A stretch of 64,000 nucleotides of DNA, from positions 160,955 through 224,954 of the IMG/VR virus record IMGVR_UViG_3300006931_000029; one strand, written 5' to 3'. This document shows positions 49,218-57,335 of this stretch, in pieces; the first letter of the stretch is position 1, and every line of letters starts with the position of its first letter. Under the pieces are notes generated by a model. It saw only the letters and a program-made list of their open reading frames with translations, did no database searches and was not told where the DNA came from. Position numbers and translations under genes: made by a program.

Positions 49218-49433
49218 TCATGTGAGGAACGACTTTGAAGGAACGAACTTCACTACTGATCGGGCCTGAACCTTGACGATTTGACCGCTCGGCAAACGCT
49301 GGTTGCCGGCTTTCTTCTTCACGATCTTGAAGGTGCCGAAACCGCGGATTGACAGCTTTCCGTTCTGGCGAACGGATTGCCGGATGTCACTCAGAAAATT
49401 CTGCAGATTTGGTGCAAGAGGCTTGACGATCAT
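49218..49433 (-). CDS. HU/IHF-family DNA-binding protein
   Basis: LSIRGFGTFKIV...GQIVKVQARSVVKFVPSK. Confidence 0.8.
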   Translation of the reverse strand: MIVKPLAPNLQNFLSDIRQSVRQNGKLSIRGFGTFKIVKKKAGNQRLPSGQIVKVQARSVVKFVPSKSFLT

Positions 49434-50003: not shown

Positions 50004-50120
50004 TTAAGAAGCCGGAGCTTCGGTTGGAGCTGGCGTGGCTGGTGTCGGTTCGGCCGGTGCAGGCGTTGCGACTTTCGGTTTGCCAGCTGAGGTTTCGTTA
50101 TCTTCTGCGGGAGCGCCCAT
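50004..50120 (-). CDS. 38-aa Pro/Ala/Thr-rich peptide
   Basis: MGAPAEDNETSAGKPKVATPAPAEPTPATPAPTEAPAS. Its leader CAGGACATCACC-ATGGG resembles that of the vWA gene. Confidence 0.55.
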   Translation of the reverse strand: MGAPAEDNETSAGKPKVATPAPAEPTPATPAPTEAPAS

Positions 50121-50137
50121 GGTGATGTCCTGTTGGT

Positions 50138-51469
50138 TTACGTTAATGAGCCAACAGCGACGGTTTCTTTGTCGTCAGCCGTTGGCCCGAAAGAGAGAAG
50201 ACGCGGAACAATTCCGGTGGTGGCTTTGATCTCTGTCAATAACCAGTCAATGGTTCCTACGTCTTTGTAGACCGGTTTTGCGTTCTCAAGAGCTTGTGTA
50301 ACTTTGGCCCGTGCAAACAAATCCCGAGAACTAGAATGATCGAGACGCATGGTAGACCTATCCGGCAATCTGTACTCTGAGCAGACCTTCAGTTCGCCAA
50401 GTGAACTTACCCGATCCAAGCATGTCACGGCTAGGTAGTCCATCTTGCCGGCGACGTCGCACGCGTACTTCAATGCCACAGTGTCGAGCCAACCAGCCCT
50501 CATGCCACCTTGCCATCGGTTGTGGACGTTGTGCTGCTCTGGAAGTCTGCGCGTCATATCCTCGTCATAAGCAACAAAGGGACCCGCGCCATGTCTCGTG
50601 CTGTAGGCTCGCGTTACGCCGATCTTGGTAACCTCTCCGCCATAGCCGATCTCGTCCAACATTTCGTCGGCGTTGGCGAACGTCGTTGTGCTCCACGTGG
50701 TATGAGGATGAAAACCGTACCACTCGTCTAACAACACGCCTTGAGCGCCTTCGAAGACGATTGGTCTGTCTTGGTTGGCGATGTCTCTCCACGTGTTGCG
50801 CGGCACGATATGAACCTCTTGGACGAAACTTTGATAAATTCCTAGAAAGAAGTCGATGACTGATCCGTCAACGAAGCAATCCTCAAACTCCTGCATCGCG
50901 TCTGGATGAAACGACGCGCCATCGAGCATCCTCTTCAACTTGGCGCATTTGTGCTCTCTCAAGAGCTTTAGTTTCTGTCTGACGAGGTCTGGATAGAATA
51001 AATCTCCAGCTCGGATAACGAACTGAGGATTCAACATGACGTCCTCCATCGTCTCGCCGATGCCGATGCCGCACGTTCCGTGGGCTCCGTCACCGCGGTG
51101 CAGCTCAATGATTCGGTTCGCCGCTTGTTGAAAAGGGCTGATGATAGGCGCCTCGTGATCTATGAAAGTGCGAGCCATCGGCTTCGACACGCCAAGCGTC
51201 TCGAGATGCGCGGCTTCCTTCATCATAGCCTTTGGAGCGATCAGCACGTGTTTCGACAGGAACGTGGTGGTATCGTCCACGAACATGCCGCTGCCGAACT
51301 GAGAAAATTTGTGGCTTCGTCCATCACTTGTGACGACGTGGTGGGCCGCCTGAGCGCCACCGTTAAACCGGACCACAGTTCCAGCGCCCACCTTGCGGAC
51401 AAGGTAATCGACGGTCGTTCCTTTGCCTTGGTCTCCATATCCAAGGTCGACGACGATGTAGGCTTTCAT
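50138..51469 (-). CDS. Divergent adenylosuccinate synthetase-like (PurA-fold) ligase
   Basis: GDQGKG, RFNGGAQAAH, FEGAQG.LLD, AYSTRHGAGPF, GWLD. The aspartate-binding loop is replaced. Confidence 0.9.
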   Translation of the reverse strand: MKAYIVVDLGYGDQGKGTTVDYLVRKVGAGTVVRFNGGAQAAHHVVTSDGRSHKFSQFGSGMFVDDTTTFLSKHVLIAPKAMMKEAAHLETLGVSKPMARTFIDHEAPIISPFQQAANRIIELHRGDGAHGTCGIGIGETMEDVMLNPQFVIRAGDLFYPDLVRQKLKLLREHKCAKLKRMLDGASFHPDAMQEFEDCFVDGSVIDFFLGIYQSFVQEVHIVPRNTWRDIANQDRPIVFEGAQGVLLDEWYGFHPHTTWSTTTFANADEMLDEIGYGGEVTKIGVTRAYSTRHGAGPFVAYDEDMTRRLPEQHNVHNRWQGGMRAGWLDTVALKYACDVAGKMDYLAVTCLDRVSSLGELKVCSEYRLPDRSTMRLDHSSSRDLFARAKVTQALENAKPVYKDVGTIDWLLTEIKATTGIVPRLLSFGPTADDKETVAVGSLT

Positions 51470-51511
51470 AAAAGTGAGGCCGCCAAGAGTAGGGGTGTCG
51501 TCTTGGCGGCC
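51470..51511 (-). terminator. Hairpin / possible attenuator between the vWA and PurA-like genes
   Basis: 11-bp stem GGCCGCCAAGA/TCTTGGCGGCC followed by TCACTTTT-ATG. Confidence 0.5.
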
Positions 51512-51529
51512 GGTCGCTCGGTCGGTGTG

Positions 51530-52525
51530 TCAGGTCAGGCGACCATCATCGCCAGCGGTTGGAACCGCCGCTGGGAGATTGCTTGCCGCCGCCTTGGCGG
51601 TAATGGCACGAGACGTCGAAACAACGGCCAGTGCCGAACTTGCTGCGCGAATAGCGCCAGAATCTGCGCCTGCACTGTGTAGGTCGTCTGCTCCGTCCTT
51701 GATACTGGCGATGGCTCCTTCGACGAGGCCGATCGTCATGACGATGGTTTCACAAACAGCGTCGGCGTCAGGAAGCATGATGACTCGTTCGCCGAGAAGT
51801 TTCTTCCAGCGCTTGGCGATCTCCGGCATCGAACCAGTGCTCGTGGTTGGGATGATGTGGAACCACTCGTAGCGAGTCAGAAGCTCCTTGGTGATTTGCT
51901 CGAGTGTAACACTCGCCTCGAGTTTGTCACCAATTAGCTGCTCCACCTGTTCGCGATCGACCTTCGGATATGGCATCTCGTCACCGATGGTGAAGAGGTA
52001 CGCTTTTTCCTGCCGCTTGTCCCAGCAGTCGAGGTCGGTTCGACGAGCGAAATAGAAGGGGATGAGCTCGTAGGATTCCGTGTTCTGGCCACCGCCACCG
52101 CCCTCGAGGAAGAATTTCCCGAGGTTATCGTCCATCTCCAAGCCGGATTCGAACTGACCGATCTGCAGAGGGACGCTATCGGTTGTGGCATCGCCGACGG
52201 CGCCGAAGAGAATTTGCGGGTCTTGCACGTAACTCTTGGCCAGCAGAATGTGCATGAGTTGACCGAGTTTCTTTTGGAGGACGACAGGGATTCCTCCCAT
52301 AGAGCCAGTGACATCGAAAACGACGGCAATGGCGCGCGAATTTGGGTGAGCGGCGCTGTCGCGAGATTCACGGCGCTTGTCCTTGATGTTCATGTCGGCG
52401 TGAACCACTCGCGGCCCACCTGACGATTTGACTGAGTGGTCGTAGGCGAATGCCGACGCTCCCGTTGCGGCGCGGTGTGTGGTCCGCGCTGTGTAATCCT
52501 TGTCTGACCAGCTTGTTGATCCCAT
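51530..52525 (-). CDS. vWA-domain protein
   Basis: MIDAS motif VFDVTGSM, GAVGD, LQIGQFES, EGGGGGQ..ESYEL, FTIGDE. Confidence 0.85.
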   Translation of the reverse strand: MGSTSWSDKDYTARTTHRAATGASAFAYDHSVKSSGGPRVVHADMNIKDKRRESRDSAAHPNSRAIAVVFDVTGSMGGIPVVLQKKLGQLMHILLAKSYVQDPQILFGAVGDATTDSVPLQIGQFESGLEMDDNLGKFFLEGGGGGQNTESYELIPFYFARRTDLDCWDKRQEKAYLFTIGDEMPYPKVDREQVEQLIGDKLEASVTLEQITKELLTRYEWFHIIPTTSTGSMPEIAKRWKKLLGERVIMLPDADAVCETIVMTIGLVEGAIASIKDGADDLHSAGADSGAIRAASSALAVVSTSRAITAKAAASNLPAAVPTAGDDGRLT

Positions 52526-52541
52526 GGTGATTTCTCCTGCG

Positions 52542-53678
52542 TTATGCCCCTGCTAGTGCTGGGACGTTAAAGATGCGAAACTTTGGTTTGCCGAAATTCT
52601 TCTCGAGCATTTTCTTCCAGTTGGTGGCCAACTCGAGAGCGTCGTTAGGACGACGATGAGGTGCCGGGATTAGGCAAGAACGAAGAAAGCGTTGCATTTC
52701 AATCGGTACGCCAGCTGGAAAGACGGGATTGTGCGGTACGTTAGTTGCAGCACCGAGTAGGATCGACAACGTGAACGCAGCCATGTAGATGTCCACGGCA
52801 GGAGTTGCTCCCATGCTTTTCAAAACTTCCGGTGGATAGAGAGCGATCCATTTTTTCGATATGGCCTTGATTGGTTCACCAATCGGAACCGAATAGCACC
52901 AGTCCACCAGCACCAGCCCGTGGTTCTCAGCGCAAATCAAAGCGTGATCAGGCGTAAACGCTCCGTGGACAATACCAGAAGCGTGGACAAGTCCAAGCGT
53001 CGTCCATGTCCGACTGCCCATCCATGCCACGTCTCGTGGATCGAGTGGAGCCATCTTGTACGCGTCGAGAATGTGGTTCATGCTCGTCAACCCTTCTGCT
53101 GGAATGAAGACGTTAGCCACTCGTTTTTTGTTGGCGACGTCTGCGACCGTAATGGATTCCAATAGTCGCGGAATTCTGAACTCCATGTCCTTGTCTTTCG
53201 CCAACTTTTCAATGGACGTCCGCTCCGCAGTCATCAGGTCATTATTCTTCGGATTGCGTACGACTTTGACGTATGCCTCGTGGGTATCTCCGTCTTCAGA
53301 GTATTGAGCCTTGAGCACATCAGCAAGGTCACCTGTCAGCGACAATGGTTCCCCAACAACGTAGATTCGTTTCTTCGAATGGATGGTAACAGCCTCCGGA
53401 GCTGTGGCGACCACTGCCACCTTTCTGTCACCGTAAGTCTTAGCTTCGATCTTGGCCTCGGCCTGACCCCACCACTTGGCGAGAAGTTGAAACGCACCGT
53501 CGGCGACCTTCTTGTCTTTCGGGTCCGTGTAGCGATCGGCGTGGCAAACCTTAGCGAATTGGTGATAGAGTTTCTTGCCGGCCTTCATCGGGTCGGCAGA
53601 GCTCAGCTTCCCAAAGACGTCTTCAGGGCATTTCGCCTTGTTGAGTTGCTTGCGAACGTTATCGAGTTCAGGATTCAT
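52542..53678 (-). CDS. J-domain-like + Ser/Thr kinase-fold (pseudokinase) protein
   Basis: YHQFAKVCHADRY...AFQLL (J-like); YVKV, AE, IPRL, VHGAFTPDH, LVDWCY, YPPEV, DIYM (kinase subdomains). Confidence 0.75.
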   Translation of the reverse strand: MNPELDNVRKQLNKAKCPEDVFGKLSSADPMKAGKKLYHQFAKVCHADRYTDPKDKKVADGAFQLLAKWWGQAEAKIEAKTYGDRKVAVVATAPEAVTIHSKKRIYVVGEPLSLTGDLADVLKAQYSEDGDTHEAYVKVVRNPKNNDLMTAERTSIEKLAKDKDMEFRIPRLLESITVADVANKKRVANVFIPAEGLTSMNHILDAYKMAPLDPRDVAWMGSRTWTTLGLVHASGIVHGAFTPDHALICAENHGLVLVDWCYSVPIGEPIKAISKKWIALYPPEVLKSMGATPAVDIYMAAFTLSILLGAATNVPHNPVFPAGVPIEMQRFLRSCLIPAPHRRPNDALELATNWKKMLEKNFGKPKFRIFNVPALAGA

Positions 53679-54567
53679 CGTCTTTTGCTTCTGGGAGCTC
53701 TTCGACTATGGTTTGCAGAAGGTCTTGGTCTTGCTGTTGGCGTTGCTCCATCTCGCGCCACGCGGACATGTCTAGAAACTGCTTCACTCCGTTTTCAACC
53801 AGAGCTATAAGTGTCTTCGGCTCGAGAGCGTCTAGTTCCCAACTGCTATCGCCGAATTGTTCTCGGTATGCCGCGGCTCGGCTGTCATCCATCTTCACCG
53901 GGTTTTCTGGGAGTTGATGGCGCTGGACTTGGTCGTAATTCAACGCGAGTCGAACGACGTCAACTGGGCCGTCGCTGTAGCGCTCGAGTCTATCTCTTAC
54001 GTCACGAGACATGTCCAAACCGGACGGGTCGTGGTCACCCAAGTAGAGCACATGAACGTCTTTTCCTTCGACATCGCGCTGCGACTGAATGAACTTTCCT
54101 CGCGAGTACATCGATGACACGGACGAGTAACCTTTGTTGGCCGTAAAAGCAACTCCCCATTTTTCGCAGACCGGCGCCAGCACGCCTTCCAGGGCTTGCT
54201 TCTCAACCATGACCTCGACGTAATGCTGTTGCTGTTTCCACCGAGCTAAACGAAAATGTTCAGTCAAGTGCTGCAGATACGACTTGAGACTCTTATATTC
54301 CGGAATCGAGTGAGTCACGCGTCCGCGGTCTTCGATGGCGTCCCAATCTAGCATGCCGCCTTCTCTTGATTCAGAGATAACGGTAGCGAACGCTTCGTAG
54401 TTTTGCGGCGTATTTTTCATCCAGTTCTTCGCCACAAACTGGTAGTAAAGCTGGCGAACCGTAAGCTTGAAACCCTGTGAGAGATAGTCTTGGCACAAGC
54501 CGTCGGCTTTCGCGATAATGTCGATCGCTCGTTCACCAAACTTCTTCTCTCTGAAGCATTCTTTCAT
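53668..54567 (-). CDS. Toprim-domain protein (Topo VI-A/Spo11/DUF2399-like)
   Basis: LTVRQLYYQ, VEVMVEK, KGYSS, LYLGDHDPSGLDM, WELDAL. Confidence 0.75.
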   Translation of the reverse strand: MKECFREKKFGERAIDIIAKADGLCQDYLSQGFKLTVRQLYYQFVAKNWMKNTPQNYEAFATVISESREGGMLDWDAIEDRGRVTHSIPEYKSLKSYLQHLTEHFRLARWKQQQHYVEVMVEKQALEGVLAPVCEKWGVAFTANKGYSSVSSMYSRGKFIQSQRDVEGKDVHVLYLGDHDPSGLDMSRDVRDRLERYSDGPVDVVRLALNYDQVQRHQLPENPVKMDDSRAAAYREQFGDSSWELDALEPKTLIALVENGVKQFLDMSAWREMEQRQQQDQDLLQTIVEELPEAKDDES

Positions 54568-54577
54568 GGACGGGTTT

Positions 54578-54612
54578 AGGCTAGCGTTGTCCTTGAGTTT
54601 GTAAACAAAAAT
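54578..54612 (-). promoter_or_regulatory. Sigma70-like early promoter heading the Toprim-to-PurA-like operon
   Basis: TTTACA-N16-TAGCCT-N10-ATG(54567). Confidence 0.7.
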
Positions 54613-54615
54613 AAA

Positions 54616-55131
54616 TCACTTGCCGTACCACGCCGTGATCGGTCGTATTGCGAACGGAGCAGAGTGGCCATGCATCGGAATGTGACCCCAATCGCCGGTG
54701 TAGATTCGCCAACCTCTGTTGTTGCTCCCATCGTGGTCGCACCAGCCGTCCCAACCGTAATCGTGGCGTAGGCACGCGTAGGCGTCGTACGTTGCGGTGA
54801 GGCCATCCCTGGTTTCAGGAAGTGGCGGTGGAGTGACCTTGTCAGCGGCTTCCGAATTGAGGTAGTTGTAGACGAAAGCAGCAAGTTTTTGAGGATCGTA
54901 ACCCTCGCCAAACGGAAATCGTTGCGTCAACTTATCGTTGTGATCGATCGGATACTGATACAAGACAAGGCCGAGGTGAGGATCGATTCGATAGCCCGTG
55001 AAGCCTCCGTACCCTTCGCTCTTCTTCGCGTGAACCTGCGGCCACCGAAATTCTCTGCGGAAGATGAATTCGAGGATGCCGACCAGTTGAGCTTGGTTAT
55101 CGCCTGTGACGTTGAATCTGTGGTTGTCCAT
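54616..55131 (-). CDS. Hypothetical protein
   Basis: DHDGSNNRGWRIY...FAIRPITAWYGK. Confidence 0.65.
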   Translation of the reverse strand: MDNHRFNVTGDNQAQLVGILEFIFRREFRWPQVHAKKSEGYGGFTGYRIDPHLGLVLYQYPIDHNDKLTQRFPFGEGYDPQKLAAFVYNYLNSEAADKVTPPPLPETRDGLTATYDAYACLRHDYGWDGWCDHDGSNNRGWRIYTGDWGHIPMHGHSAPFAIRPITAWYGK

Positions 55132-55967
55132 TACTTCAGGGCAGTGTTGATTTTGATCTTCTTGCCGGCGCGACGGCCCTCGGCAACAGAGCCGAAATCG
55201 TCTAGATTTCCTTCACTGACTTTGAAGTATTTCAACCGAGGATGGTAACCCTTGACGGCTTGATCGACCTTCTCTTTTTCGCCGATCAAAATCATGGCGA
55301 CGGATTTGCCTGCATCAGCGTGCGACAGTTCGGCTTGCGCTTCGGCTTCGACTTTTCCCTTCTCGATGTCAAGCTTCTCATTGAGACCTTGGTAGACACC
55401 GTAGAAGAAGCTGTTACGGCTTGACATCGGTGCGTCGACGGCCTTCCGGTGTTTGTGCCAAAGGTCAATGAATTCGCGATGGAGAAAGCCGTAGACGTAG
55501 ATGGCAATGTGAACGTTGGTCTGTCGACCGATGAAGCTTAACGATTTCACGGTACCCGTCTTCTTGATTCCTTTGTCGACGTAGTCAGTCCAATCTGAAC
55601 ACTCGATGATCTTCACGCCGAAATACGACTTGAGAATCCACGTGATGAACTTATGACAGGATGGAAGTCTAGCTGCGCAAACTCCGCCTCCCTCGCGAGA
55701 AGGCCTGAACGGTTGCTGGACGATCGGCTCACCGGCTGACGTGTCCTCCGTCATGTCAATTGAGGCAAGGTCAATCCCGTGCTTCAGTGCAAGTCGTTGT
55801 GCGGCCATGAGCGCACCTTCGGCTTCGGCTTGTGTCGATCCTTTCGATGTCTCAGCTCGAGAAAGGAGCTTTTTGATCTTCTCGAGAATCTCGGTGTTCG
55901 CGACCGACATCGCCGGATGGTTCTCCGGTTTCAACCCTTCTGGTGCCTTCTCTGGTGCGTCGCTCAT
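55131..55967 (-). CDS. DUF2786 domain protein
   Basis: ILEKIKKLLSRA...EAEGALMAAQRLALKHGI. Confidence 0.8.
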   Translation of the reverse strand: MSDAPEKAPEGLKPENHPAMSVANTEILEKIKKLLSRAETSKGSTQAEAEGALMAAQRLALKHGIDLASIDMTEDTSAGEPIVQQPFRPSREGGGVCAARLPSCHKFITWILKSYFGVKIIECSDWTDYVDKGIKKTGTVKSLSFIGRQTNVHIAIYVYGFLHREFIDLWHKHRKAVDAPMSSRNSFFYGVYQGLNEKLDIEKGKVEAEAQAELSHADAGKSVAMILIGEKEKVDQAVKGYHPRLKYFKVSEGNLDDFGSVAEGRRAGKKIKINTALK

Positions 55968-56369
55968 TGTAGTCAAGAACTAGTCAGACCCCAGGATTCG
56001 TTATCTTGGGCGGCGTGATTTCGTTCAATTTGTTGAGAATTTTCCTGATAGCCAGTTGAATGCCCATTCCACGCTGGGCTTTGTCGAGTTCGAGAAACTG
56101 AGATTGCTCAGCTATCTTGGCCAGCGTGTCTAACTCTCGCCACGTGAGCTGGTTTTCGTTGTCCGGAAAAACACTGGACGCATTCACTATTCCGTAGAGA
56201 AATCCTCCAACTTGAGACGCGCGTTGACACACGCCGTCATAGTGTTTCTGCGAGCACTCAACTAGCAACTCAATCTCGTCAGGAGAAAAGGTAACCCACG
56301 CTTTTGGTTGAAAAGTGACAGACAAGAGATTCATTTCGGTGCAGGCCTCCTAGTCGGAGGGCTGTAGCG

Positions 56370-56411: not shown

Positions 56412-57335
56412 TTAGTTGAGAAGCAGGTCGACGGCGGCCGTCTGCAGGCCAATACCGTAACCGATCATGTTGGTCTCGAAGCGGGATTCGGCAGCACGCT
56501 TAGCGCGAACCGGTTTCTCGTGCGAGAGGAACTGCGTGACCGCGTTTAACGCGTCGGCGCGGGTCTTACCCTCGTTGCCGATACCGTTGCGGAAGAGCTC
56601 GAACACCTTTGTGCGGGTGTTGGTGACACGTTTGCCTTCGCCGGGCATCCAAACCTCGACGAATTTCTTCGCGTCGCCTTCGGACATCTTGACGGACTGG
56701 AGTTGGTTGTAGACCTTCTGGAACTCCTGCGCATGCTTGTCGGCGAGACCGACGATGCGGTGAGCTTGTTCAATTTTGTCCTTGAAGTTTTTCGTGTGAC
56801 GGATAACGACCATCGATTTGGCCTCACCGAGGGCGGCCGACAGCGTGTTCATGCAAACCACGCGAGTGGAGACGAAGCGAACTGAAACCGGTTTGGTGCC
56901 GTCGTGACTGAGATAAACGAGGAAGTACTGCTTGAGTCCGTCGTTTTTGCCAGAGAGAAAGTACTCCTTCTTGAGGCTGGCGAGGAACCAAACGATCTTG
57001 CCGTTGCGGAGTGAACCGGCCGTCTCGTAGACTGCGTCGTCACCGATAACCGGATCGAGGATGTTGAGACCGTCGACGTTCTGGATCGGCGTGTAGCGGG
57101 TGCCCACGATTCCGAGGGGCTCGCCAGTGTCAGCGCGAACGATTCCGAAGTGGTCGGGGAAGGATTTGCCGTCAGCAACGCGGATGCGTTTCTTTGAAAC
57201 TTCCCAGTTCAGTTTGGCCTGAGCGAGAGCGGCTTCCGCCGTAAGAGCACCTTGGACAACGGTGCCGAGTTTGTGCCACGGGACGATACCGTTAGCAGAG
57301 ACCATGTGGTCATTTTCCTGGAGTTCGTGAGCCAT
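56412..57335 (-). CDS. DUF932/DUF945 family protein
   Basis: MAHEL, PWHKLG, YTPIQN, ETAGSLRNGK.VW, SHDGT, RVVCMNTL, IRHT. Confidence 0.9.
   Translation of the reverse strand: MAHELQENDHMVSANGIVPWHKLGTVVQGALTAEAALAQAKLNWEVSKKRIRVADGKSFPDHFGIVRADTGEPLGIVGTRYTPIQNVDGLNILDPVIGDDAVYETAGSLRNGKIVWFLASLKKEYFLSGKNDGLKQYFLVYLSHDGTKPVSVRFVSTRVVCMNTLSAALGEAKSMVVIRHTKNFKDKIEQAHRIVGLADKHAQEFQKVYNQLQSVKMSEGDAKKFVEVWMPGEGKRVTNTRTKVFELFRNGIGNEGKTRADALNAVTQFLSHEKPVRAKRAAESRFETNMIGYGIGLQTAAVDLLLN

What the first reader, a model, noticed from the sequence alone, without database searches (positions are those of the whole stretch)
50004..54605. Toprim / J-pseudokinase / vWA / PurA-like operon with altered catalytic motifs: candidate uncharacterised nucleotide- or protein-modification system
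Seen: one early promoter (54578-54605) heads a tightly packed run of a Toprim protein, a J-domain plus kinase-fold protein, a vWA protein, a PurA-fold protein and a 38-aa peptide. The PurA-like protein keeps the catalytic Asp and His (GDQGKG, AAH). However, the aspartate-binding loop (TTGRxR in canonical PurA) reads HNRWQGGMR, the guanine-recognition TKLD reads TCLD, and GTTG reads GTCG. The kinase fold has HGA in place of HRD and DWC in place of DFG, and the J-like domain has HAD in place of HPD. The vWA MIDAS is intact. Established: PurA phosphorylates O6 of IMP and then ligates aspartate, and PurZ has Ser at the Asp13 position. Inference: this is neither purine biosynthesis nor Z-base synthesis. 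It may be a ligase that joins a different amine (a small molecule or a protein side chain) to a purine nucleotide, with vWA and the pseudokinase as adaptors. I recall similar vWA/kinase/PurA-like neighbourhoods in bacteria without a known function, so the module may be catalogued but not characterised.
Basis: partly seen in the sequence, partly recalled or inferred. Interest (0 to 1): 0.85.

Follow-up and report, generated by a model that had tools for sequence, protein, structure and literature searches.

The report
Conserved J-pseudokinase, vWA, PurA-like gene trio
A large phage carries a three-gene cassette (a chaperone-recruiting pseudokinase, a metal-binding vWA adaptor and an adenylosuccinate-synthetase look-alike that has lost its aspartate pocket); the same cassette occurs in hundreds of big phages and bacterial chromosomes, and I found no paper describing it, so it probably encodes an unknown purine-nucleotide reaction.

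Summary
The genes and every quoted motif are at the stated coordinates, all on the minus strand. The functional unit is a trio, not the five ORFs listed: J-domain/kinase-fold protein (52542-53678), vWA protein (51530-52525) and PurA-like protein (50138-51469).

This trio recurs in the same order in about 70 of 80 bacterial loci (Chloroflexota, Actinomycetota, Planctomycetota, Myxococcota). It also recurs in 72-76 of 80 viral contigs and in about 200 Bixzunavirus mycobacteriophages.

The "altered" motifs are invariant family signatures. GTP-binding and catalytic residues are kept (D13, K16, H41, Q224, D333). The aspartate-binding residues are replaced (T300W, T301Q, R303 deleted, R305F). The protein scores far below the curated PurA and PurZ cut-offs.

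HGA and DWC are family-wide in the kinase domain. HAD is peculiar to this phage clade, because relatives have HPD.

The Toprim gene is a Top6A/Spo11-like neighbour found in other phages. It is not part of the module, and neither is the 38-aa ORF. The promoter is unverified.

In 53 of 80 bacterial loci, nearly all actinobacterial, an NrtR-like Nudix regulator gene heads the operon.

The function is uncharacterised. Most likely it is GTP-driven activation of a 6-oxopurine nucleotide coupled to a non-aspartate nucleophile, with the vWA and J-domain proteins as adaptor or regulators.

The parts
52542..53678 (-). J-domain + Hanks-type kinase-fold protein (predicted pseudokinase), 378 aa; module gene 1
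   Evidence: phrog_3043 'kinase' at 4.2e-33. AF2 pLDDT 93.8, with four N-terminal helices followed by a kinase fold; Foldseek top matches are AAK1, Pim1 and PknB, TMt 0.7-0.77. Of 38 family members, 17 hit Pfam DnaJ and 17 hit Pkinase. K138, E152, H238, G239, H245, E284 and D296 are invariant; the HRD Asp is Ala in 38 of 39; the DFG Asp is kept in 34 of 39; the J motif reads HAD here but HPD in 35 of 39.
51530..52525 (-). vWA-fold protein with MIDAS-like DxTGS...GDE, conserved N-terminus MGxxxWS and conserved C-terminal ...RL; module gene 2
   Evidence: phrog_2971 at 1.7e-69. ESM Atlas structural matches to vWA clusters. Invariant D71, T73, G74, S75, Q121, Q124-F-E126, G144-146, E150 and G181-D182-E183. 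In 147 homologues the N-terminus is M-G in 144 and the C-terminus is R/K-L in most. The family comprises 982 clusters at 50% identity with E <= 1e-30.
50138..51469 (-). PurA-family (adenylosuccinate-synthetase fold) enzyme with the aspartate site replaced; module gene 3
   Evidence: PF00709 at 3.5e-67. Below the PurA and PurZ equivalog cut-offs. Residue map against E. coli PurA: D13, K16, H41, Q224, T239, R272, D333 and S414 are kept; changes are N38Q, I126H, T129C, V273H, T300W, T301Q, R303 deleted, R305F/M and K331C.
53668..54567 (-). Top6A/Spo11-like Toprim protein; a co-linear neighbour, not part of the conserved module
   Evidence: phrog_6247 'DNA topoisomerase' at 3.2e-96. Motifs RQLYY (38-42), E118 and DHDPSG (178-183) are invariant in 5 homologues. 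ESM Atlas links it to PF21180 TOP6A-Spo11_Toprim. Its homologues lie in a different set of phages. It is absent from all 80 bacterial loci and from 78 of 80 viral loci that carry the trio.
50004..50120 (-). 38-aa Pro/Ala-rich ORF; lineage-specific small gene, not part of the module
   Evidence: The N-terminus MGAPAEDNETSAGKP is shared with 62-98 aa ORFs at the same position in related phage contigs. The window copy lacks their central segment. Nothing equivalent occurs in bacterial loci.
54578..54605 (-).
   Evidence: TTTACA-N16-TAGCCT in the 48-nt gap upstream of the Toprim gene. Not reported by the sigma-70 scan. Unique in the window, and the relaxed motif occurs no more often than chance.

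Best explanation
The window carries a mobile three-gene module: a J-domain pseudokinase, a MIDAS-vWA protein and a PurA-family enzyme. The module is shared by many large phages and by bacterial chromosomes.

The PurA-like protein keeps the GTP-binding P-loop, the guanine-specific Asp333, the catalytic Asp13/His41/Lys16 and the base-contacting Gln224. It most likely still uses GTP to phosphorylate O6 of a 6-oxopurine nucleotide such as IMP. Its aspartate pocket is rebuilt into an aromatic, uncharged one (Trp300, Gln301, Phe305, Arg303 deleted). The activated C6 is therefore handed to a nucleophile other than aspartate. Candidates are ammonia, a neutral or hydrophobic amine, or a peptide amine. 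The product would be an AMP-type or N6-substituted adenine nucleotide.

The vWA protein is the obligate partner, so it is probably the adaptor or activator that docks on the enzyme through its MIDAS and its conserved termini. The J-domain pseudokinase keeps its nucleotide-binding residues but has no catalytic Asp. I infer that it binds a nucleotide and links the complex to host DnaK/Hsp70. This would resemble the way MoxR AAA+ ATPases work with vWA adaptors on target enzymes.

Shown: gene content, conservation, co-occurrence and the residue pattern. Inferred: the substrate, the nucleophile, the protein contacts and the DnaK link.
For: - Co-occurrence is strong. About 70 of 80 bacterial loci and 72-76 of 80 viral loci carry the trio. 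It is also present in about 200 Bixzunavirus genomes and in Oscillochloris and Chloroflexia chromosomes.
- Order variants such as NrtR-vWA-PurA-Jkin keep the same gene set.
- vWA plus PurA-like is the tightest pair. It persists in the Vibrio and Rhizobium phage clade, where the upstream gene is unrelated to the J-kinase.
- The catalytic and GTP residues are invariant, and the aspartate residues are replaced, in 190 bacterial and 70 viral sequences.
- The protein scores below the PurA and PurZ cut-offs.
- HPD J domains predominate in the family.
- The kinase fold keeps K138, E152 and D259 but has Ala at the HRD Asp.
- The vWA termini are conserved.
- An intein is inserted next to the IGDE motif in some vWA genes, which argues that the protein is functionally important.
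Against: - No biochemical or structural evidence exists for any step.
- In this phage clade the J motif is HAD or HQD, so DnaK recruitment may be weakened or lost in the window itself.
- Residues around the IMP 5'-phosphate are also changed (N38Q, T129C, R143 lost, new His126 and His273). The nucleotide may therefore not be IMP.
- No AAA+ or Hsp70 gene is linked to the module, and no protein fusions were found to prove contacts.
- The NrtR-like regulator in 53 of 80 bacterial loci, nearly all actinobacterial, points to NAD/ADP-ribose biology, which this model does not explain.
Confidence: 0.35

Rival explanations
1. Protein purinylation. The vWA protein is itself the substrate. After Met removal its invariant N-terminal Gly amine attacks the GTP-activated C6, or alternatively its conserved C-terminal ...RL tail enters the PurA-like active site. 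The result would be a protein-nucleotide conjugate. The J-pseudokinase would act as scaffold or reader.
For: The vWA N-terminus M-G-x-x-x-W-S-x-D-x-Y is almost invariant (Gly2 in 144 of 147), and so is the extreme C-terminus R/K-L, across phages and four bacterial phyla. vWA and PurA-like are the obligate pair. The aspartate pocket has become aromatic and uncharged.
Against: I know of no precedent for such chemistry. Conserved termini can be structural or docking elements. No fusion and no complex model is available. The C-terminal motif varies in several viral clades.
Confidence: 0.12
2. Nucleotide signal or stress module tied to NAD/ADP-ribose metabolism. The PurA-like enzyme makes a modified adenine nucleotide. 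The nucleotide-binding pseudokinase senses it, and the vWA protein relays the signal to a target. In actinobacteria the operon is switched by an NrtR-like, ADP-ribose-type regulator. Phages carry the module to manipulate or counter this response.
For: An NrtR-like gene (NUDIX + NrtR_WHD) sits immediately upstream, usually with a 4-nt overlap, in 53 of 80 bacterial loci, nearly all actinobacterial, and in 5 viral loci. Rhizobium phages place the pair next to phosphoribosyltransferase and NMN-adenylyltransferase/Nudix genes, and a Vibrio phage places it near a NADAR gene. The pseudokinase keeps its ATP-site residues.
Against: There is no match to PADLOC defence models for the vWA or PurA-like proteins. 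In Micromonospora and Actinomadura the operon is syntenic and looks vertically inherited, unlike defence islands. No effector domain such as a nuclease, NADase or pore is present. The NAD-related neighbours come from only a few lineages.
Confidence: 0.15
3. Ordinary auxiliary purine metabolism. The protein is a divergent but genuine adenylosuccinate synthetase that boosts AMP supply during infection, and the neighbouring genes are unrelated.
For: PF00709 match, intact catalytic Asp13 and His41, intact GTP site. Databases name it adenylosuccinate synthase.
Against: T300, T301, R303 and R305, which bind aspartate in E. coli PurA (established knowledge), are replaced in all 260 homologues. The score is 190 bits against a 402-bit equivalog cut-off. 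Strict co-occurrence with the vWA and J-kinase genes across phyla argues against unrelated neighbours.
Confidence: 0.06
4. PurZ-type enzyme of the 2-aminoadenine (Z-base) pathway.
For: PHROG 1211 carries the label '2-aminooxy adenylosuccinate synthetase'.
Against: The PurZ model NF038379 scores 40 bits against a cut-off of 300. Asp13 is kept where PurZ has Ser. PurZ still uses aspartate, and that site is lost here. No PurZ chain appears among the PDB sequence hits, whereas bacterial PurA chains do. No DatZ- or MazZ-like neighbours were seen among the flanking ORFs scanned.
Confidence: 0.01

Closest known systems
Adenylosuccinate synthetase PurA (EC 6.3.4.4)
   Same: Same fold (PF00709), the GDxGKG P-loop, catalytic Asp13 and His41, Gln224, the guanine-specific Asp333 and the SxGP motif. 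It is 30-32% identical to E. coli PurA.
   Different: The aspartate loop TTGRRRR reads WQxxFR. The residues around the IMP phosphate differ (N38Q, T129C, R143H/Y/N). His126 and His273 are new invariant residues. The score is less than half the equivalog cut-off. The gene is always paired with a vWA gene.
Phage PurZ / PurZ0 (2-aminoadenine pathway)
   Same: A phage-borne PurA-superfamily paralogue with altered specificity.
   Different: PurZ descends from the archaeal short PurA form, has Ser in place of Asp13, still uses aspartate, and sits beside datZ and mazZ. None of this holds here.
MoxR AAA+ / vWA adaptor pairs (CbbQ-CbbO, NorQ-NorD, RavA-ViaA, Mg-chelatase ChlI-ChlD)
   Same: A MIDAS-bearing vWA protein is encoded next to a chaperone-type partner and next to the enzyme it is thought to act on. 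This is a functional analogy recalled from my own knowledge.
   Different: There is no AAA+ ATPase. A J-domain protein, which would recruit Hsp70 in trans, takes that place. The analogy is untested.
TerY-P triad (vWA + Ser/Thr kinase + PP2C phosphatase)
   Same: A vWA gene adjacent to a Hanks-type kinase-fold gene in bacteria (recalled from my own knowledge).
   Different: The kinase here lacks the catalytic Asp, there is no phosphatase, a J domain is added, and a PurA-like enzyme is present.
NrtR regulons (Nudix-related regulators of NAD metabolism)
   Same: In 53 of 80 bacterial loci, nearly all actinobacterial, the first gene of the operon has the NUDIX + NrtR winged-helix architecture.
   Different: Known NrtR regulons control NAD synthesis and salvage genes. 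I found no report of this trio among them. The window phage has no such gene beside the trio.

Membership tests
PurA (adenylosuccinate synthetase) | PF00709 fold with the GDxGKG P-loop and catalytic Asp13/His41 | tested here: met
   PF00709 at 3.5e-67. D13, K16 and H41 are invariant.
PurA (adenylosuccinate synthetase) | Aspartate-binding residues T300, T301, R303, R305 (E. coli numbering) | tested here: not met
   W, Q, a deletion and F/M respectively, in all 190 bacterial and about 70 viral homologues.
PurA (adenylosuccinate synthetase) | IMP 5'-phosphate contacts N38, T129, R143' | tested here: not met
   Q38 and C129 (V in some phages). R143 is replaced by H/Y/F, and by N in the window.
PurA (adenylosuccinate synthetase) | Score above the curated equivalog cut-off | tested here: not met
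   NF002223 gives 190 bits against 402. TIGR00184 gives 165 against 396.
PurA (adenylosuccinate synthetase) | Adenylosuccinate formation / purA complementation | not testable with these tools
   Needs an enzyme assay or genetics.
PurZ | Match to the PurZ model; Ser at the Asp13 position; Z-cluster neighbours (datZ, mazZ) | tested here: not met
   40 bits against a 300-bit cut-off. Asp13 is present. No such neighbours appear in the flanking ORFs scanned.
J-domain proteins | Helical J fold with the HPD tripeptide between helices II and III | tested here: inconclusive
   Helices at 3-14, 18-22, 30-45 and 53-78. The window has HAD at 46-48, whereas 35 of 39 relatives have HPD. Pfam DnaJ hits 17 of 38 relatives but not the window protein.
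Hanks-type protein kinases | Kinase fold with the beta3 Lys, alphaC Glu and DFG Asp | tested here: met
   Foldseek matches to AAK1, Pim1 and PknB. K138 and E152 are invariant, and D259 is kept in 34 of 39.
Hanks-type protein kinases | Catalytic-loop HRD Asp and the downstream Asn | tested here: not met
   H-G-A (Ala in 38 of 39) and His245 (38 of 39) take their places.
vWA / MIDAS proteins | vWA fold with a DxSxS...T...D metal site | tested here: met
   Structural matches to vWA clusters at TM 0.5-0.59. D71-x-T73-x-S75 and D182 are invariant. There is no Pfam hit, and metal binding is untested.
Top6A/Spo11-type Toprim (the upstream neighbour) | 5Y-CAP catalytic Tyr motif plus a Toprim Glu and DxD | tested here: inconclusive
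   RQLYY, E118 and DHDPSG are invariant. ESM Atlas links it to PF21180 clusters. There is no Pfam or PDB sequence hit, and Foldseek on a pLDDT-74 model found nothing.
Known anti-phage defence systems (PADLOC) | Match of the component proteins to a defence-system model | tested here: not met
   No hits for the vWA or PurA-like proteins. The kinase domain gives only weak generic matches.

The most novel reading that the evidence does not exclude
The PurA-like enzyme is a GTP-dependent 'purinyl ligase'. It would attach a purine nucleotide through C6 to the invariant N-terminal glycine of its vWA partner, or to another protein amine. That would be a previously unknown protein-nucleotide modification, read or regulated by a J-domain pseudokinase and Hsp70, and used by jumbo phages and by multicellular-type bacteria.
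Probability: 0.1. Interest if true: 0.95.

Novelty: new variant of a known kind. Interest (0 to 1): 0.72.

Why it matters
PurA-superfamily enzymes are known for two reactions only, to my knowledge: AMP synthesis and the phage Z-base pathway. Here a third clade is sharply defined. It keeps the GTP-driven activation chemistry and has discarded aspartate. It is always tied to a vWA protein and usually to a J-domain pseudokinase.

The clade is common. The vWA partner alone forms about 1,000 clusters at 50% identity. It occurs in jumbo phages, in the well-studied Bixzunavirus mycobacteriophages, and in Actinomycetota, Chloroflexota, Planctomycetota and Myxococcota.

Working out its product would add a new purine-nucleotide reaction. 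It would also give a role to a bacterial J-domain pseudokinase. It may expose a link between NAD/ADP-ribose sensing (NrtR) and adenine-nucleotide chemistry that phages exploit. Bxz1-type phages and M. smegmatis offer an immediate experimental system.

Tried and rejected
- Megablast of the region against GenBank phages found nothing.
- PDB sequence searches found nothing for the vWA protein or the Toprim protein, including a 5-sequence Toprim profile.
- Foldseek on the Toprim model gave only noise, because the model was mediocre at pLDDT 74.
- Rfam scans of the window and of 11 bacterial loci found no riboswitch or other RNA beside the operon, only unrelated tRNAs.
- PADLOC gave no defence-system match.
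- Nine literature searches and one paper read found no description of the trio.
- Profile comparison of the upstream genes in the Vibrio and Rhizobium phages with the J-kinase family showed no relationship.
- I looked for enzyme displacement in loci with a vWA gene but no adjacent PurA-like gene (L007, L010). The neighbours were ordinary regulators, so nothing was learned.
- I looked for covariation between the vWA C-terminal motif and the PurA-like pocket residues. The pattern only follows lineage.
- Longer vWA homologues were checked for informative fusions. Only an intein turned up.
I rebuilt the alignment without that row.
- Not done: a check that trio-bearing bacterial genomes also carry a canonical purA.

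Full report
WHAT IS THERE

The window is part of a 224,954-bp viral contig, IMGVR_UViG_3300006931_000029. Positions 50004-54567 carry five minus-strand ORFs packed head to tail.
- 53668-54567: 299 aa, phrog_6247 "DNA topoisomerase".
- 52542-53678: 378 aa, phrog_3043 "kinase".
- 51530-52525: 331 aa, phrog_2971, function unknown.
- 50138-51469: 443 aa, Pfam Adenylsucc_synt at 3.5e-67.
- 50004-50120: 38 aa, with no family match.

The proposed promoter at 54578-54605 is only a weak TTTACA-N16-TAGCCT resemblance. The sigma-70 scan did not report it, it is unique in the window, and its relaxed form occurs no more often than chance.

THE UNIT IS A TRIO

tblastn against GenBank phages shows the PurA-like and vWA proteins in the same genomes: about 200 Bixzunavirus (cluster C1) mycobacteriophages, 10 Rhizobium phages and 6 Vibrio phages. 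The kinase-like protein is found in the Bixzunavirus set. In phage Bigswole the order is kinase, hypothetical (vWA), an 88-aa ORF, then "PurA-like adenylosuccinate synthetase".

The Toprim protein occurs in a different set of phages, namely Pseudomonas PaMx25-like, Xylella Sano/Salvo, Flavobacterium and others.

The closest homologues of the PurA-like protein outside its own phage clade are bacterial, at 45-49% identity. In Oscillochloris trichoides and in a Chloroflexia genome the gene is preceded by a DnaJ-hit protein of about 355 aa and a protein of about 329 aa with no Pfam hit.

A profile of the vWA protein scanned against one genome per species found at least 496 loci. I examined the best 80. 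They come from Chloroflexota, many Actinomycetota genera, Planctomycetota, Myxococcales and one gammaproteobacterium. About 70 of them carry J-kinase, vWA and PurA-like genes in that order on one strand. None carries the Toprim gene.

The same scan of viral contigs found 289 contigs, many of them 150-490 kb. Of the best 80, 72 have the J-kinase and 76 the PurA-like gene. Only the window and one other contig have the Toprim gene.

Close metagenomic relatives of this phage keep the local synteny DUF932, DUF2786/DUF7168, a 171-aa ORF, Toprim, then the trio and a small ORF. The Toprim gene is therefore a lineage-specific neighbour. The 38-aa ORF is a shortened copy of a 62-98 aa gene found only in that lineage.

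The vWA family comprises 982 clusters at 50% identity with E <= 1e-30.

A quick maximum-likelihood tree of the PurA-like proteins, rooted on E. coli PurA, shows deep and diverse viral lineages. Bacterial clades that follow taxonomy are nested among them, which indicates repeated exchange between phages and bacteria followed by vertical inheritance. The root and the deep branches are uncertain.

THE PurA-LIKE ENZYME

I aligned 190 bacterial and 70 viral homologues to E. coli PurA. Two groups of residues stand out.

Kept, invariant or nearly so:
- G12, D13, G15, K16, G17
- H41, Q224, T239, R272, D333
- S414 and G416, nearly invariant in the bacterial set and less conserved in the viral set (S414 in 43 of 70)

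Replaced throughout the family:

| E. coli residue | Family residue |
|---|---|
| N38 | Q |
| I126 | H |
| T128 | S |
| T129 | C (V in one viral clade) |
| R131 | aliphatic |
| R143 | H/Y/F (N in the window) |
| V273 | H |
| T300 | W (aromatic) |
| T301 | Q |
| R303 | deleted |
| R305 | F (hydrophobic) |
| K331 | C/H |

From established PurA enzymology (my own knowledge), D13, H41 and K16 carry out GTP-dependent phosphorylation of O6 of IMP. D333 and S414 read guanine. T300, T301, R303 and R305 hold L-aspartate. N38, T129 and R143 of the partner subunit hold the IMP 5'-phosphate.

The family therefore keeps the activation chemistry and has systematically rebuilt the nucleophile pocket and part of the nucleotide pocket, under purifying selection.

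It scores 190 bits against the 402-bit PurA equivalog cut-off and 40 bits against 300 for PurZ. [quoted passage not shown] Neither canonical PurA nor PurZ membership holds.

THE PARTNERS

The 378-aa protein folds with high confidence (pLDDT 93.8) into four N-terminal helices followed by a Hanks-type kinase domain. The best structural matches are AAK1, Pim1 and PknB. Of 38 relatives, 17 hit Pfam DnaJ and 17 hit Pkinase.

K138, E152, H238, G239, H245, E284 and D296 are invariant. The HRD Asp is Ala in 38 of 39, and the DFG Asp is kept in 34 of 39. This is the pattern of a nucleotide-binding pseudokinase or an atypical enzyme, not of a decaying gene.

The J-motif is HPD in 35 of 39 aligned relatives and in 54 of 63 viral ones. 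HAD or HQD occurs only in the window's own clade.

The 331-aa protein has a vWA fold. Its invariant residues are D71-x-T73-G-S75, Q121, Q124-F-E126, a G-rich loop, E150 and G181-D182-E183.

Its termini are strikingly conserved across 147 phage and bacterial proteins. The N-terminus reads M-G(144)-x-x-x-W(127)-S(122)-x-D-x-Y(123). The extreme C-terminus, after a variable linker, reads R(97)/K(12)-L(111).

Some mycobacteriophage vWA genes, and a metagenomic homologue, carry an intein near the IGDE motif.

vWA plus PurA-like is the minimal pair. In the Vibrio and Rhizobium phage clade the upstream gene is unrelated to the J-kinase.

A FOURTH GENE

In 53 of the 80 bacterial loci, nearly all actinobacterial, a gene with NUDIX and NrtR winged-helix domains lies directly upstream, usually overlapping the J-kinase start by 4 nt. 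A canonical Nudix box is present in at least 32 of the 53. Five viral loci also have this gene, with a rearranged order. No riboswitch was found.

This ties the operon to NAD/ADP-ribose-type regulation. It fits the NAD-salvage and NADAR neighbours seen in the Rhizobium and Vibrio phages, although those are few lineages.

HOW IT MOST LIKELY WORKS

Shown: a conserved, mobile trio, and a PurA-family enzyme with intact GTP and catalytic residues but no aspartate site.

Inferred:
- The enzyme activates C6 of a 6-oxopurine nucleotide and passes it to a non-aspartate nucleophile. Candidates are ammonia, a neutral amine or a peptide amine.
- The vWA protein docks on the enzyme as adaptor or activator.
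- The J-pseudokinase binds a nucleotide and recruits DnaK. This is analogous to MoxR-vWA activases.

I put this at about 0.35. The rivals are:
- the vWA protein as substrate (protein purinylation), 0.12;
- an NAD/ADP-ribose-linked nucleotide-signal module, 0.15;
- plain adenylosuccinate synthetase, 0.06;
- PurZ, 0.01.

Caveat for this window: the HAD motif suggests that the DnaK link may be weakened in this phage clade.

NOVELTY

PADLOC, NCBIfam and Pfam have no models for the vWA protein or for the cassette. Nine full-text searches found only genome announcements that list "PurA-like adenylosuccinate synthetase". Subscription-only literature was not searched, so an earlier comparative-genomics mention cannot be excluded.

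I rate this a new variant of a known kind, namely a third functional clade of the PurA superfamily embedded in an undescribed cassette. There is a roughly 10% chance that the chemistry is categorically new.

Noticed in passing
window 53668-54567 (-): The 'Toprim' protein looks like a compact Top6A/Spo11-type enzyme. It has an invariant RQLYY at 38-42 (resembling the catalytic-Tyr motif), E118 and DHDPSG at 178-183. ESM Atlas links it to PF21180 clusters. Homologues occur in Pseudomonas PaMx25-like, Xylella, Flavobacterium and other phages. Pfam and PDB give no hit.
   Followed up: partly
L028 4116-4940 and 52 other bacterial loci; viral loci L110, L118, L119, L122, L135: An NrtR-like gene (NUDIX + NrtR winged helix, mostly with a canonical Nudix box) is translationally coupled to the J-kinase gene. 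In actinobacteria this makes a four-gene operon and suggests control by ADP-ribose or a related nucleotide.
   Followed up: partly
GenBank Bixzunavirus hits H94-H101 and H104-H106; protein P0172: In some mycobacteriophages the vWA gene is split into two blocks about 750 nt apart; in one record (CharlieB) the feature annotated under the match is an HNH endonuclease. A 581-aa metagenomic homologue has a Hint (intein) module inserted near residue 176, beside the conserved IGDE motif.
   Followed up: partly
window 50004-50120 (-); L087 8387-8683, L088 8366-8587, L089 8406-8594: The 38-aa Pro/Ala-rich ORF shares its N-terminus with 62-98 aa ORFs at the same position in related phages. It lacks their central NL(T/I)L.DG...YNPVTG.W segment, so it is a shortened lineage-specific gene.
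   Followed up: yes
window 55131-55976 (-) and 56412-57335 (-): A DUF2786/DUF7168 protein and a DUF932-like protein (phrog_1221) lie upstream. The same order is kept in related contigs of about 229 kb, which marks a conserved early or accessory region of this phage group.
   Followed up: no
window 49218-49433 (-): A 71-aa HU/IHF-like DNA-binding protein (phrog_379). The equivalent gene in related contigs hits Bac_DNA_binding.
   Followed up: no
L002 (Rhizobium phage RHph_TM39) 636-2239 and 4649-4966; L003 (Vibrio phage phiKT1024) 4201-4845 and 10566-12074: In these phages the vWA/PurA-like pair lies near NAD-salvage-type genes (phosphoribosyltransferase, NMN adenylyltransferase/Nudix), a HIRAN-domain ORF, a NADAR protein and a TROVE (Ro60-like) protein.
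   Followed up: no
viral loci L126-L143, e.g. L136 2183-2938 and L134 38-571: In one viral lineage the trio is flanked by RNA-repair-type genes: an R2K ATP-grasp, a HAD_SAK_2 gene, an ATP-dependent ligase and an Rv2179c-like exoribonuclease.
   Followed up: no
window, whole: No tRNA genes and no Rfam family reach threshold in the 64 kb. Nearly all ORFs of 110 aa or more between about 2 kb and 58 kb are on the minus strand.
   Followed up: no
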